A stretch of 64,000 bases of DNA from positions 1-64,000 of the forward strand of contig CDROCS010005562.1 of assembly GCA_977020255.1 (NCBI GenBank), written 5' to 3'. Shown here piece after piece: positions 3,393 through 6,792 of this stretch. The notes beneath the pieces are model-generated. The model ran no database searches, was not told the origin of the DNA, and saw only the letters and a program-made list of their open reading frames with translations. Numbering within the stretch: the first letter of the stretch is position 1; each line of letters opens with the position of its first letter. The stretch comes from Obrimoposthia wandeli. Taxonomy: Eukaryota. A program made the position numbers and the translations under genes.

Positions 3393-3504
3393 AGTTTTAA
3401 CATCCTGCATTCCATTACATAAGATGGTTCTACCTTACCATATCGTTTGGGTTATTGCTGTTAACTAGTTTTTAGGTAGCGCTAAAATTCTAAGCCAGAA
3501 CTGG

Positions 3505-3568
3505 ACATAACCGCGTTAGAGCGATAACTCCAACAATGCTTATTAGCATTAGGAAAAGTATCGCTAAC
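3505..3568 (-). repeat. Degenerate/truncated attC-like hairpin
   Basis: Imperfect inverted repeat GTTAGCGATAC...GTTATCGCTCTAAC followed by GCG-GTTATGT (R'-like), directly abutting attC1. No R'' box. Confidence 0.4.
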
Positions 3569-3572
3569 TTGA

Positions 3573-3669
3573 GATTAACGCCCTGTTAACAGGAAAAATA
3601 GTTGGTTAAAATTAGCGACGAAGGAGCAAAACCAACTGTTTTTTGTCCTTGTTTAACAGCTTGTTAGCT
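3573..3669 (-). repeat. Integron attC site 1 (97 bp)
   Basis: Minus strand: R'' AGCTAAC, 5-nt spacer, L'' GTTAAACA (one extrahelical base versus L'), paired centre AGG..AGTTGGTT/AACCAACT..CCT, L' TGTTAAC, 5-nt spacer, R' GTTAATC. Confidence 0.88.
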
Positions 3670-3964
3670 TAATATTTAATAATCTAGATCACCACGGTAT
3701 CTTTCAATTATTTTATGACCACAGTTTGTACATATTAAATGCAAATCTCTTAGCTCCATAAACCCAGCAGTGCCTCCAGCACCCCAGCCAGCAACAAGTG
3801 CAGATATAAACTCTTTGACCTTTGCCTTTCTTCCCATATTGGAATTATTCTGAGGCTTTACTATAACCCCAATATGATCGACCTCTTCATTACATTCTTT
3901 GCAAAAACGTTTTTCAGGTTCCATGTTATTCTGCTCCAGAATCAATTTTACGGATTTAAGCTAA
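3579..3964 (-). mobile_element. Integron gene cassette (386 bp) carrying a Zn-ribbon ORF
   Basis: Begins G/TTAGCT and its own attC begins with the exact complement AGCTAAC. One ORF with an RBS fills the cassette. Confidence 0.85.
3676..3924 (-). CDS. Cassette-borne small Zn-ribbon hypothetical protein (82 aa)
   Basis: MEPEKRFCKEC...LICTNCGH gives two CxxC pairs flanking a Gly-rich helix. GGAG RBS upstream; stop 6 nt before R''. Confidence 0.75.
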   Translation of the reverse strand: MEPEKRFCKECNEEVDHIGVIVKPQNNSNMGRKAKVKEFISALVAGWGAGGTAGFMELRDLHLICTNCGHKIIERYRGDLDY

Positions 3965-4065
3965 CGCCGCAATAACACGTGCGAACGCCTTAATGACCAA
4001 ACCAATTATACTTTAAACCAAAAACGCTGAGTGTAATAAGCATCGTGTTGATTGCTTTGTTATAC
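3959..4065 (-). repeat. Integron attC site 2 (107 bp)
   Basis: Minus strand: R'' GTATAAC, spacer AAAGC, L'' AATCAACA (extrahelical C), variable centre, L' TGTTATT, spacer GCGGC, R' GTTAGCT. Same TAACAA...GGCGTTAG polarity as Vibrio-type attCs. Confidence 0.85.
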
Positions 4066-4440
4066 CCGAACTAAACTGTCCCTAGAGAAGTAATTACAAC
4101 ATATTCTGTTAATTAACTGTTCCATGAAAGTCAGACTCAAAATCATGACCTGAAACCATTTTATTGGTTTTATCTGCAGCAGGATCTTGTGACCAATTAC
4201 GACTTTGGCTATTACTACCCTCCCAGTTAAGCTTTTAGGCTAACTCCCCATCTCAAGTATATTGGATGAATGATGTAGAAAAATAGGAAAGCGCTCCATC
4301 AAACTTGTTAGCAGTTACAATAAGCTGATTTATAAAACCTATCTGTGTTAGTTGAAAATCGTAACGTATTGAGAAAGAACAAACACAGTTAAAGCTGCTA
4401 ATAGATTAGTAATAACAACCACTTTAAACAGATTTAGCAT
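4060..4440 (-). pseudogene. Decayed cassette ORF (membrane protein remnant)
   Basis: RBS AAGGAAGG and ATG 4440 give hydrophobic MLNLFKVVVITNLLAALTVFVLSQY; later WEGSNSQSRNWSQDPAADKTNKMVSGHDFESDF in another frame. A TAA lies inside the R'' box of attC2. Confidence 0.5.
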
Positions 4441-4928
4441 AGGTTTCCTTCCTTAACAGGCCTCTCGATCTCCCAAATTCATTAACCTCAATAAAAGTAG
4501 ATTAATCAATTGAAAAATAAGATTATACTTCAAATTTATTAATTACATGTTTATGGGAAAACGAGCCGTCCTGTAAATTATTTATTTAGTCTTATAAGTT
4601 ATATACAAGGCTAGCTATGGGACGCGTCGATATACTTTGATTGGACATTAATTAGGCTACAAAATAAACCTGACTCGCCTTTCTTTAAAAGTTGAGACTG
4701 TGTTCACTGAGCAATAAAATAAATAACACAGCTGGGGCAAATCAGCCCATCAACTCTTTTTTTTCTATTATGTTATTCTTATACTTAGTTGGTAAATTTT
4801 GCATGATAAAATGTATGGTAAATTGATATGTACATATTGTGAGTGAGTTAAAGCTCTAACACAGTTTGGGGCTAGAATTTGTCAGAATCGCGGTTAATTG
4901 GCCCCCTACAAAATAGGGTTCCTTTCGA

Positions 4929-5110
4929 CTAACAATCAGTACCTTCTGAAAGTAACAATGCGTCTTCTAATTCAACGCCAAGGTAGCGGATCGTGTTTCT
5001 ACCTTTGTATGTCCCAGTAAAAGCTGCACCGCTCGAATATTTTTCGTTTTTGCATGACTAATGTCGCTTTGGTTCGCCTCATCGAGTGAGTACTGTAGTT
5101 GGAAGGCGAT
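4929..5110 (-). pseudogene. Tyrosine recombinase (phage integrase family) C-terminal remnant
   Basis: Two frameshifts join NYSTHSMRRTKATLV / KNIRAVQLLLGHTKVE / TIRYLGVELEDALLLSEGTDC*. This is catalytic box II (H-x-x-R, LLGH, Y). Confidence 0.82.
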
Positions 5111-5232
5111 GAACAAAGACGTGTTTCAAGTTGACCTAATGAATGTCCGGAAATAACTTTAGCAACTAAATCTCTACTACATTCTCCCCTAATAGTGATA
5201 AAATCTCCGCACCAAAATAACCGAGAAACTCT

Positions 5233-5571
5233 ATGTTAATCCATCATGTTAACGGCATCGACTGGCTGGTGATTACAGCTTTTGAAGAACTGAAAACTAT
5301 ATTTATCGAAGAAGCCGGTGCGATCACCTTTTGCTTCTCTACCGCCAGCGAATTGAACCTGATTGATCAAGCCAAGCGCACTTATGGATATTTGCCTACA
5401 CTCAGGGGCGTAATTACCGATACCGGCACTTTTCAAAGCCAGGATAACGAAGAAGATTTGAACCCACAGCTTGCCTGCCTAGTTGAAGGGCGTGGTCGGG
5501 TATTTATCTATCACGGCGGCTTTGTGGCTTTTGTGGATGACGAGCAAACCTTTATTACCCGAATGGACTGA
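5233..5571 (+). CDS. Hypothetical protein (112 aa)
   Basis: Intact ORF of plausible composition next to the recombinase remnant; no motif recognised. Confidence 0.65.
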   Translation: MLIHHVNGIDWLVITAFEELKTIFIEEAGAITFCFSTASELNLIDQAKRTYGYLPTLRGVITDTGTFQSQDNEEDLNPQLACLVEGRGRVFIYHGGFVAFVDDEQTFITRMD

Positions 5572-5653
5572 AAATTATTCAGTCATTTGAAATCGGCGAA
5601 TTGCAAGGCCTGACCGTATTCGCTGTATTACCTCTATTTAGCACGTATTGATG

Positions 5654-6148
5654 TTAGTTCATTTTTGATACTGCGTGCTGCTCTACCATGAACGCAATCA
5701 CTTCATCACTTAAGCAAGATTTACTGACGTATTGGCGCTGCTTTCCCATATGAAGGATAAGCCCTAAATCGGTTTGTTGAAGTTGGTCGATTTCAGTCCA
5801 TGCGATATTGCGAGTGTTTTTACCGTTTTTATAACTCACACCGTTAGCGTCACCCTGAAATACCACTTTGCTGCCTGAGTTCAAGCTGAACTTTTGTCGG
5901 CATAACCACCAGCTTCTCTTAAAATAAATACTGAACGCCTCAATGATACTCAAAGTAATAAAGAACCAACCAACGTAACCGCTGGGTAATAGCTCAAACT
6001 TCACTAAAACCACACCAAAAATAAGAAAAAGTATTCCTTTTAAATAGGCTTTTGGAAATTTAGCAGGACTGTTAGTTTGACCATAACACTCAGCAAAAAA
6101 GGGCTTGTCGAGGGTGTATTCTGTGGTGAAATCAAAATCTTTAGACAT
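5654..6148 (-). CDS. YcxB-like family membrane protein
   Basis: Two TM helices followed by a small soluble domain (IAWTEIDQLQQTDLGLILH...YVSKSCL). Confidence 0.7.
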   Translation of the reverse strand: MSKDFDFTTEYTLDKPFFAECYGQTNSPAKFPKAYLKGILFLIFGVVLVKFELLPSGYVGWFFITLSIIEAFSIYFKRSWWLCRQKFSLNSGSKVVFQGDANGVSYKNGKNTRNIAWTEIDQLQQTDLGLILHMGKQRQYVSKSCLSDEVIAFMVEQHAVSKMN

Positions 6149-6213
6149 ATGTGACTACTTTGAAGTTTTCTGTGAATGAGTATCCATGCTGCGATCTTGC
6201 AACTCGAGTATTG

Positions 6214-6479
6214 TATACCCATGACCATTCAAAATGCAAAAATCAGCAAGTCGAGAGGTGACCAGATTCAAGGCATGAAGTTGATGATCTAGTTATTCTA
6301 AATCAAGACTTCATAACACCGAAGATGGTTGCCTCTCGCCTTGCCCTGCGGGAGACCAGCTTGAAAACCAGCACTGCGTTGCCATATTTGAAAAGGGAAT
6401 AACCATTCTCTGCATATTGCGCCTTATTCTGGTGTTCAAGCTGGCCTCTGAATTAGCATTTTGAATGGCCATGGGTATA
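6214..6479. mobile_element. MITE (ERIC-like TATACCC termini), 266 bp
   Basis: 24-bp terminal inverted repeats with 1 mismatch (TATACCCATGACCATTCAAAATGC / GCATTTTGAATGGCCATGGGTATA), TA at both ends, two nested internal hairpins, no transposase. Confidence 0.8.
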
Positions 6480-6533
6480 TAACTTTTGGTGCTTTTCTTT
6501 AGCTGTTTTGATCCTCTTTTGTAAATCTAAGAC

Positions 6534-6734
6534 TTAGCTAACTTTATTGCCCATCTTAGAATATCCAAATACTAAATGAAGCGCTTCGGCCTGACTTTTA
6601 CCTTCAGACATTAATCGTGTGATGTCTTCAACGATATTTTCTTGAACAGCTAGCGGAGGTGGTGTTTCTATCTCCATATTCATAATATCGTCGATGCTAA
6701 TTTCCATTTTATTCCTTGTCATTGATTTGTTCAT
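6534..6734 (-). CDS. Small hypothetical protein, weakly YoaH/UPF0181-like
   Basis: VEDITRLMSEGKSQAEALHLV resembles the UPF0181 helix pattern. Start uncertain. Confidence 0.45.
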   Translation of the reverse strand: MNKSMTRNKMEISIDDIMNMEIETPPPLAVQENIVEDITRLMSEGKSQAEALHLVFGYSKMGNKVS

Positions 6735-6792
6735 GTTATTAAATAGCCGACTCAGTTTAACATGTTAGCTATATTAAAATTCAGTCTATCCC

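What the first reader, a model, noticed from the sequence alone, without database searches (positions are those of the whole stretch)
3505..4460. Hidden integron cassette array with no integrase (CALIN-like)
Seen: two complete attC sites (3573-3669, 3959-4065) on the minus strand with canonical R''-5nt-L''...L'-5nt-R' layout and an extrahelical base. The cassette between them starts GTTAGCT and its attC starts with the exact complement AGCTAAC. Established: this geometry is the IntI substrate. The two attCs differ in length and central sequence, which suggests different donor integrons (inference). No intI or attI is visible in the 64 kb, so the cassettes could be mobilised in trans by a superintegron integrase elsewhere.
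Basis: partly seen in the sequence, partly recalled or inferred. Interest (0 to 1): 0.8.

Follow-up and report, generated by a model that had tools for sequence, protein, structure and literature searches.

The report
Integrase-less integron remnant in Moritella
Two genuine integron gene cassettes sit on a Moritella chromosome fragment behind a leftover integron attachment-site region but with no integrase gene. This is a common kind of orphan cassette cluster; the unusual part is that the same integrase-less unit is copied many times across Moritella genomes.

Summary
A covariance model built only from attC sites lying next to real integron integrase genes on other contigs hits the whole 92-kb contig at exactly two places. 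These are 3573-3669 and 3959-4065, both on the minus strand and matched end to end.

Cassette 1 (3579-3964, 386 bp, 82-aa zinc-ribbon ORF) is 99-99.7% identical in two other Moritella species whose backbone is only about 80% identical. In one of them it follows a different attC. Its homologues are attC-flanked cassettes beside a true IntI in Thalassotalea. Cassette 2 (3965-4456) carries a broken gene.

No intI lies on the contig, so this is formally a CALIN. However, an attI-type head is present (4457-4890). It is homologous to the region that abuts an intact intI in one Moritella genome and a truncated intI on a sister contig. A conserved terminus (about 3478-3578) closes the array.

The two attC types do not imply two donor integrons. 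The same pair, in the same order, occurs as one unit in another Moritella genome.

The head region occurs in 11 of 13 Moritella species, in up to 14 copies, and its cognate integrase is nearly always absent. The scan noted another integrase-less array elsewhere in this assembly.

Verdict: a known kind, with moderate interest.

The parts
3478..3578 (-). 'X': a conserved sequence of about 90-100 bp that starts right after the G|TT crossover of attC1 (top strand TTAATCTCAA...). It is the array terminus.
   Evidence: The same sequence follows the G|TT of three unrelated attCs, in the window, in JT01 contig 6 and in contig NORP17. It is degenerate at the syntenic C410 locus. It is 92% identical in the equivalent unit of genome G012. 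In most copies it is contiguous with module 3b.
3573..3669 (-). attC1 (97 nt), the recombination site of cassette 1. R'' is AGCTAAC and R' is GTTAATC.
   Evidence: CM R1 gives 66.7 bits, E 7e-13, full length. It is 94% identical to an attC near the intI of C2866 and 97% identical to an attC in the C410 array. The hairpin forms with all bulges on the L'' arm.
3579..3964 (-). Cassette 1, 386 bp, running from the TT of attC2's R' box to the G of attC1's R' box.
   Evidence: It starts TTAGCT, the complement of its own R'' box AGCTAA. The body is 99.65% identical in JT01, where it follows a different attC, and 98.96% identical in G012. Near-identical pieces occur in seawater and sediment metagenome contigs.
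3676..3924 (-). Cassette 1 ORF, 82 aa from the ATG at 3924. It is a small zinc-ribbon protein (CxxC...CxxC) with a central Gly-rich hydrophobic helix. Function is unknown.
   Evidence: Pfam gives only weak zinc-ribbon hits. Eleven homologues of 78-85 aa show 78% mean column identity and four invariant Cys. The Thalassotalea aquiviva homologues are flanked by attCs, one copy in an array beside an IntI scoring 466 bits. The AlphaFold model is weak, at pLDDT 61.
3959..4065 (-). attC2 (107 nt), the recombination site of cassette 2. R'' is GTATAAC and R' is GTTAGCT.
   Evidence: CM R1 gives 32.1 bits, E 1e-4, full length. It is 87% identical to an attC in the C666 array, 86% identical to one in the C410 array and 95% identical in G012. 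The extrahelical G and T have canonical spacing on the + (bottom) strand.
3965..4456 (-). Cassette 2, 492 bp, carrying a broken gene for a small membrane protein. Only a 30-aa ORF remains (4348-4440), followed by frameshifted remains.
   Evidence: Homologous ORFs of 116 aa are intact in C1101 (L024) and in G012 (L074 11730-12080). The window copy has a premature stop and frame changes. Homology with C1101 ends exactly at CTG|TTAAGG.
4457..4737 (-). Module 3a, an attI-type head of the array. It is non-coding and ends ...CCTG|TT at the cassette side.
   Evidence: It is 77-87% identical to regions that head cassette arrays on C410, on C1101 and in Moritella JT01, DT_65 and G012. In DT_65 the homologous region lies between an intact intI (387 bits) and the first cassette. 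On C410 it lies next to a 26-codon intI stump that is 96% identical to that IntI. In more than 12 copies the sequence is conserved up to a GTT and unrelated beyond it.
4738..4890 (-). Module 3b, the segment that replaces the intI start and LexA-box region in the integrase-less variant of the head. It contains half of a hairpin that elsewhere links it to X.
   Evidence: It is shared with C1101, DT_65, JT01 and G012 copies but not with the intI-linked variant. Solo copies also exist, for example at C5562:86862-86919.
4932..5113 (-). C-terminal remnant of a non-IntI tyrosine recombinase. It has two frameshifts and is cut off at its 5' end, where the sequence shared with C410 begins.
   Evidence: Three-frame translation shows ...HSMRRTKATL / NIRAVQLLLGHTKVE / TIRYLGVELEDAL. 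NCBIfam gives only a weak XerC-like hit for one piece. The same remnant lies beside module 3b in G002:C14 and G001:C19. It does not match the IntI proteins by tblastn.

Best explanation
Window ~3478-4890 is one integrase-less integron unit on the chromosome of a Moritella species. Read on the minus strand, it consists of:
- an attI-type head (module 3);
- cassette 2, whose gene is decayed, with attC2;
- cassette 1, whose 82-aa zinc-ribbon ORF is intact, with attC1;
- a conserved terminus X.

It has no intI and therefore counts formally as a CALIN.

**Inferred mechanism**
- The two attC sites fold on the + (bottom) strand into the hairpins that integron integrases cut.
- An IntI supplied in trans would excise cassette 1 as a 386-bp circle by attC2 x attC1 recombination, and could reinsert it at an attI elsewhere.
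- The unit itself arose from an integron of the DT_65 type. Its integrase gene was replaced by module 3b, and this integrase-less version was then copied or moved around Moritella genomes.
- The window copy lies in a 3.4-kb accessory islet between a tautomerase gene and an EamA transporter gene.

**Shown**
- The identity of the attC sites.
- The cassette boundaries.
- Recent horizontal exchange of cassette 1.
- Decay of the cassette 2 gene.
- Homology of the head to an intI-adjacent region.
- Absence of intI on the contig.

**Inferred**
- That module 3 works as an attI.
- That excision still happens.
- The route by which the unit reached this locus.
For: **attC sites**
- The CM from intI-linked arrays hits only these two sites in 92 kb.
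- As a positive control, it gives 33 hits in independent arrays of Thalassotalea, JT01, DT_65 and C410.

**Cassette 1**
- It is 99.65% identical in JT01 after a different attC, and 98.96% identical in G012. The backbone is 75-83% identical.
- Cassette 1 homologues are cassettes beside a 466-bit IntI in Thalassotalea.

**Cassette 2**
- Its gene is broken here and intact elsewhere.

**Head region**
- It is homologous to the intI-proximal region of DT_65, directly at 76.5% and through the C410 copy at 94.7%.
- The C410 intI stump is 96% identical to the DT_65 IntI.
- The junction behaves as a recombination site at GTT in more than 12 copies.

**Whole unit**
- The same unit X-attC1-c1-attC2-c2-module 3 occurs in G012.

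**Integrase**
- No TIGR02249 hit falls on C5562.
- No DT_65-type intact intI exists in the assembly.

**Insertion site**
- The JT01 syntenic site is empty.
Against: - attI function is inferred from position and homology only.
- Module 3 abuts an intact intI in just one genome. Four other Moritella intI genes, of a lineage only 46-48% identical, have unrelated upstream regions.
- In the window and in G012 the cassette junction lies 11 nt upstream of the GTT used by most copies. It may therefore not be a canonical attI x attC product.
- No convincing Pc promoter was found: promoter-like hits do not exceed shuffled controls.
- No read-level evidence of excision exists, because only contigs were available.
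- Whether the cell holds an integrase on another contig is unknown.
Confidence: 0.8

Rival explanations
1. The unit is moved as a whole by a recombinase other than IntI. A circle carrying X, the cassettes and module 3, closed through the module 3b-X hairpin, would integrate by site-specific recombination within that hairpin. The recombinase would be the tyrosine recombinase family whose remnant lies at 4932-5113. This would make it a mobile, integrase-less integron platform.
For: - Module 3b and X are contiguous in most copies, joined by a hairpin with 10-bp arms. The window unit is cut in that linker, so it is a circular permutation of the usual order.
- Copies are dispersed over a complete chromosome (G012).
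- A recombinase or recombinase remnant of the same family lies beside module 3b in the window, in G002:C14 and in G001:C19.
Against: - No intact recombinase was seen next to any unit.
- No target-site or core duplication could be shown at the window junctions.
- The distance from X to module 3b varies among copies, at about 40, 90 and 400 bp.
- Tandem duplication followed by ordinary homologous recombination explains the same pattern.
Confidence: 0.12
2. The two cassettes were inserted one after another at a secondary, non-att genomic site (attG-type insertion) by an integrase acting in trans. On this reading the cluster never had an attI or an integrase of its own.
For: - IntI-catalysed insertion outside att sites is documented (bioRxiv 10.1101/2022.09.11.507474; Cury 2016).
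- The islet is absent from the syntenic JT01 site.
Against: - The cassettes lie between an attI-type head and the terminus X.
- The same head, cassettes and terminus travel together in G012.
- The sister contig C410 has X at the same junction. The unit therefore arrived or was inherited as a block, not cassette by cassette.
Confidence: 0.05
3. The repeats are not attC sites. They would be ordinary palindromic intergenic repeats (REP-like elements or terminators) that happen to flank a small ORF.
For: - Folding energy of attC2 is no better than that of shuffled sequence.
- The attC1 core is highly repeated in marine metagenomes.
Against: - The sites are close copies of sites in arrays next to four bona fide intI genes.
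- They match the CM end to end.
- They delimit a unit that moves as a unit between arrays.
- No other copy lies anywhere else on the 92-kb contig.
Confidence: 0.01

Closest known systems
CALIN (cluster of attC sites lacking an integron integrase; Cury et al. 2016, PMC4889954)
   Same: - There are two attC sites less than 4 kb apart on one strand, with no intI nearby.
- The cassettes are of unknown function.
- Loss of intI is among the origins that paper proposes.
   Different: - Most CALINs have no recognisable trace of the platform.
- This one keeps an attI-type head and a defined terminus.
- It belongs to a family of such units repeated within Moritella genomes.
Sedentary chromosomal integrons of marine Gammaproteobacteria (for example the Vibrio superintegron)
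   Same: - The location is chromosomal.
- The cassettes are small and of unknown function.
- The attC families are shared within a clade.
- A LexA-box-like sequence lies before intI in the intact relative. This was read from the sequence and rests on my own knowledge of SOS control of intI.
   Different: - It holds only two cassettes, with two attC types rather than one homogeneous repeat.
- It has no integrase.
- The head region is multi-copy, whereas a classical integron has a single attI.
Decayed integrons with intI pseudogenes (Cury 2016 found these near 15 of 279 CALINs; the case of Xanthomonas is named from my own knowledge)
   Same: - The integrase has been lost while the cassettes remain.
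- One cassette gene is also decaying.
   Different: - No intI pseudogene is left here. The intI start is replaced by another sequence, module 3b.
- The truncated intI is seen only on sister contigs C410 and C3203.
Secondary-site (attG) cassette insertions (Loot et al., bioRxiv 10.1101/2022.09.11.507474)
   Same: The cassettes lie away from any integrase, at a chromosomal site that is empty in a relative.
   Different: Here the cassettes sit between a platform head and a conserved terminus, and they travel with both.

Membership tests
attC site / integron gene cassette | Outer boxes R'' (RYYYAAC) and R' (GTTRRRY), with the AAC and GTT cores conserved | tested here: met
   attC1 has AGCTAAC...GTTAATC and attC2 has GTATAAC...GTTAGCT. 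The cores are exact. Each site departs from the degenerate consensus at one or two positions.
attC site / integron gene cassette | Inner imperfect inverted repeats L''/L' separated from the R boxes by 5-nt spacers, with extrahelical bases on the L'' arm of the bottom strand | tested here: met
   Both spacers are 5 nt in both sites, and all bulges lie on the L'' arm. attC2 has G and T at the classical spacing. attC1 has T bulges.
attC site / integron gene cassette | Score above threshold with an attC covariance model | tested here: met
   A custom CM built from 19 intI-linked attCs gives 66.7 and 32.1 bits (E 7e-13 and 1e-4), with no other hit in 92 kb. IntegronFinder's own model was not available.
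attC site / integron gene cassette | Promoterless ORF just upstream on the same strand, and a cassette start complementary to its own R'' box | tested here: met
   The ORF at 3676-3924(-) ends 7 nt before attC1. Cassette 1 starts TTAGCT against R'' AGCTAA. The start of cassette 2 (TTAAGG) does not complement its R'' box (GTATAA).
attC site / integron gene cassette | The unit occurs as a discrete module in other arrays | tested here: met
   It is 99.65% identical in JT01 after a different attC. Homologues are flanked by attCs beside IntI in Thalassotalea.
attC site / integron gene cassette | Recombination by IntI (excision of a circle, bottom-strand dependence) | not testable with these tools
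   Only assembled contigs of public runs could be laid, and no junction reads were available.
CALIN (Cury et al. 2016) | At least two attC sites clustered, with no intI nearby | tested here: met
   The two sites are 290 bp apart. No TIGR02249 hit falls on contig C5562, and tblastn with IntI proteins finds nothing in 4300-5400.
Complete integron | An intI gene with the IntI-specific domain adjacent to the array | tested here: not met
   None is found on the 92-kb contig. The neighbouring recombinase remnant is not IntI-like.
attI site | It lies between intI and the first cassette, with a conserved left side and a variable right side joined at a GTT | tested here: inconclusive
   - The position is met by homology with DT_65 and C410.
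- The junction behaves this way in more than 12 copies.
- In the window the junction lies 11 nt upstream of the usual GTT.

The most novel reading that the evidence does not exclude
Moritella genomes carry a family of integrase-less integron platforms, each with an attI-type head, cassettes and terminus X. These platforms have multiplied to as many as 14 copies per genome and outnumber their cognate integrase. They either serve as many dispersed capture and expression sites for a single integrase acting in trans, or they are themselves mobile as circles that recombine through the module 3b-X hairpin using a non-IntI tyrosine recombinase.
Probability: 0.2. Interest if true: 0.7.

Novelty: new member of a known kind. 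Interest (0 to 1): 0.4.

Why it matters
Orphan cassette clusters are common, but their origin is usually unreadable. Cury et al. 2016 found that 95% of them have no trace of an integrase.

Here the history can be read from what remains:
- a head region that still matches the attI side of a living integron;
- a conserved array terminus;
- one cassette that was exchanged between species very recently;
- one cassette that is rotting.

This supports 'loss of the integrase from a former integron' as a route to such clusters.

The wider pattern is not a feature described for classical integrons. The same head is present in 11 of 13 Moritella species, in up to 14 copies. Its own integrase is intact in only one of those genomes. 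If those heads are functional, one integrase could feed many loci.

No resistance gene or other function of practical concern is present.

Tried and rejected
- **Rfam.** The gathering-threshold scan of the window found nothing, so no attC family matched.
- **First Python scanner.** It required R''/R' complementarity of 5 of 7 and missed both sites, because the 3' part of R' belongs to the next cassette. The relaxed scanner found them, and found dense arrays beside the intI genes.
- **RNAalifold.** Run on the MAFFT alignment of 19 attCs, it gave no consensus structure. I supplied the R and L pairs by hand for the model. They fit the commonest attC type best.
- **Simple end-motif pattern.** It finds only the two sites, but on its own it is no better than chance, with 0.6 matches expected.
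- **NCBIfam on short pieces.** The 26-aa intI stump and the three recombinase pieces gave nothing significant. The stump was identified by BLASTP against the DT_65 IntI instead.
- **tblastn with IntI proteins.** Searches against window 4300-5400 and against the C1101 and C410 loci gave no hit.
- **Other Moritella integrase lineage.** Module 3 was not found upstream of the intI genes of that lineage.
- **Promoter scan.** Promoter-like hits did not exceed shuffled controls.
- **AlphaFold.** The model of the 82-aa protein was weak at pLDDT 61, so I made no fold search.
- **Read laying.** It gave contigs only, so it offers no evidence for or against circles or excision variants.
- **Colwellia homologue.** The context look-up timed out.
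- **Rejected idea: the tautomerase gene as a third cassette.** X is not followed by a tautomerase gene in other genomes, and no attC follows that gene.
- **Rejected idea: orf112 and the YcxB-like gene as cassettes.** No attC is present and the strands differ.

Full report
**Where the window comes from.** The window is the first 64 kb of a 92,425-bp contig (C5562) in a 1.35-Gb assembly of 6,912 contigs, which clearly mixes a host with many bacteria. The backbone genes around the finding are syntenic with Moritella sp. JT01 and with Moritella MAG DT_65, at 75-83% DNA identity. The contig is therefore a piece of a Moritella chromosome. A sister contig, C410, carries the same locus at about 85% identity.

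**The observation.** Read on the minus strand, each has R'', a 5-nt spacer, L'', then L', a 5-nt spacer and R'. All unpaired bases lie on the L'' arm. On the + (bottom) strand of attC2 these are a G three bases from the spacer and a T six bases further in.

- Cassette 1 starts G|TTAGCT and its own attC starts AGCTAAC.
- Folding energy alone is weak evidence, with attC1 at z about -2.5 and attC2 no better than shuffles.
- Rfam has nothing to offer.

**Formal test with a covariance model.** TIGR02249 finds four complete integron integrase genes elsewhere in the assembly, on C253, C5466, C2866 and C666, and none on C5562.

- I fetched the cassette side of each of the four and located their attC sites with a simple scanner.
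- I aligned 19 of these sites and built covariance model R1 from them. The window's own sites were left out.
- Over the whole contig, both strands, R1 gives exactly two matches at E <= 10. These are 3573-3669(-) at 66.7 bits and 3959-4065(-) at 32.1 bits, both full length.
- In independent arrays from Thalassotalea, JT01, DT_65 and C410 the model finds 33 sites.
- attC1 is 94% identical to an attC 3.2 kb from the C2866 intI. attC2 is 87% identical to one in the C666 array.

**The cassettes.**

- *Cassette 1.* It encodes an 82-aa protein with two CxxC pairs and a Gly-rich hydrophobic centre. Its function is unknown. The cassette body is 99.65% identical in Moritella sp. JT01, where it is preceded by a different attC. 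It is 98.96% identical in Moritella genome G012, against about 80% for the backbone.
- *Cassette 1 in other samples.* Near-identical pieces occur in seawater and sediment metagenome contigs. Homologues exist in Colwellia and Thalassotalea. In Thalassotalea aquiviva both copies are flanked by attC sites, and one lies four cassettes from an IntI scoring 466 bits. This is direct evidence that the 386-bp unit moves as a cassette.
- *Cassette 2 (3965-4456).* It holds only a 30-aa ORF followed by frameshifted remains. The homologous 116-aa membrane-protein gene is intact in C1101 and in G012.

**The head of the array.** Beyond cassette 2 lies a 430-bp non-coding stretch at 4457-4890, which I call module 3. 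It recurs at the head of cassette arrays on C410 and C1101 and in Moritella genomes.

- On C410 it is followed, on the opposite strand, by a LexA-box-like sequence and the first 26 codons of an integrase gene. That gene is cut off by a duplicated piece of the gyrA 3' end.
- The 26-codon stump is 96% identical to the N-terminus of the intact IntI of Moritella MAG DT_65, which scores 387 bits.
- In DT_65 the C410-type module 3 (94.7% identical) lies exactly between intI and the first cassette.
- Across more than a dozen copies the sequence is conserved up to a GTT and unrelated beyond it, which is how a recombination site behaves. Most copies break after ...TATACAAATG|TT. The window and its G012 counterpart break 11 nt earlier, at CCTG|TT.

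I conclude that module 3 is an attI-type region, so 'no attI' does not hold. Function remains untested.

**The other end of the array.** A sequence of about 90 bp, X (about 3478-3578), begins right after the G|TT of attC1. The same sequence follows three unrelated attCs in other Moritella DNA.

**The unit as a whole.** Genome G012 carries the same series X, attC1, cassette 1, attC2, cassette 2, module 3 in the same order. It sits directly after the module 3 of a preceding unit. The two attC types therefore travel together and do not point to two donor integrons. Both types also co-occur in the C666 and C410 arrays.

- In most copies module 3b runs straight into X through a hairpin. The window unit is thus one repeat unit opened in that linker.
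- At the syntenic site JT01 has only about 130 bp between the tautomerase and EamA genes.
- C410 has X at the same junction but different content behind it.

The whole stretch 3411-6792 is therefore an accessory islet.

**Integrases.**

- Module 3 occurs in 11 of 13 Moritella species genomes, in 1 to 14 copies, and is dispersed over the complete G012 chromosome.
- An intI above the TIGR02249 cut-off occurs in 6 of the 13 genomes.
- There are two integrase lineages, 46-48% identical to each other. Only the DT_65 lineage, present in one genome, abuts module 3.
- The mixed assembly has no intact integrase of the DT_65 lineage. Its four complete intI genes are 44-47% identical to it and belong to other bacteria whose arrays share the same attC families.

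Mobilisation in trans is plausible for attC x attC excision, but it has not been shown. The available public runs are assembled contigs and cannot show circles.

**What it is called.** By the definition of Cury et al. 2016 this is a CALIN, a class they found 279 times in 2,484 genomes. Loss of intI is one of the origins they propose. Insertion at a secondary site, as shown by Loot et al., fits poorly because the head, cassettes and terminus travel as a block.

**A more unusual possibility.** The unit might move as a circle through the module 3b-X hairpin, using the non-IntI recombinase family whose remnant lies at 4932-5113. That remnant is also found beside module 3b in two other genomes. The evidence does not exclude this reading, but it is only circumstantial.

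**Verdict.** This is a new member of a known kind. The multi-copy, integrase-less head region in Moritella is worth a separate look.

Noticed in passing
window 6207-6481: A MITE-like element of about 270 bp with 24-bp terminal inverted repeats. It is absent from the orthologous sites on C410 and C2105. Two copies in Moritella MAG DT_65 are 98-99% identical, and dozens of copies at 77-80% identity occur in Moritella genomes and other contigs of the assembly.
   Followed up: partly
window 4932-5113 (minus strand): A twice-frameshifted C-terminal remnant of a non-IntI tyrosine recombinase, cut off where the sequence shared with C410 begins. A copy of the same family lies beside module 3b in G002:C14 (a remnant) and in G001:C19 (short ORFs).
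   Followed up: partly
L026 8377-8454 (G000:C410:280376-280453), also C3203:16994-17071: A 26-codon stump of a DT_65-type intI preceded by a LexA-box-like CTGTATATAACATCAG. It is truncated by a duplicated copy of the terminator and 3' end of gyrA. Behind it lies an integrase-less array in which the model and BLAST find six attC sites.
   Followed up: partly
L051 (G002:C19:4296-5069), G012:C1:2013396-2013932, G005:C124:43263-43793: A tyrosine recombinase gene (297-aa open frame in G002 and G005, 212 aa in G012), 26-30% identical to IntI and lacking the IntI-specific insert. In the two loci read (G002, G012) it sits in the first cassette position, directly after the GTT of module 3; in G005 it lies just beside a module-3 copy.
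   Followed up: no
window 5118-6217: This stretch holds a 112-aa ORF of unknown function and a YcxB-like ORF. It is 98% identical between C5562 and C410, although the flanking core is about 85% identical. Its two halves occur separately on C3840 (93%) and C2105 (90%). The window also has a 76-bp insertion at 5572-5646 relative to C410.
   Followed up: partly
L016 3474-4222 (G000:C410, syntenic locus): At the position of the window's cassettes, C410 has a different insert of about 750 bp with a higher-GC 201-aa ORF. The insert is joined to X at the same nucleotide. The model recognises no attC there.
   Followed up: partly
L033 (G000:C2866:25140-25591) and C3765:51027-51299: Further decayed, frameshifted or truncated intI genes with cassettes beside them occur in the same assembly. 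Integron decay is common in this community.
   Followed up: no
window 3556-3683 in public runs X1-X4: The central part of the attC1 family is very highly repeated in seawater, sediment and ice metagenome contigs, with many different flanks. This attC family is therefore abundant in cold marine communities.
   Followed up: no
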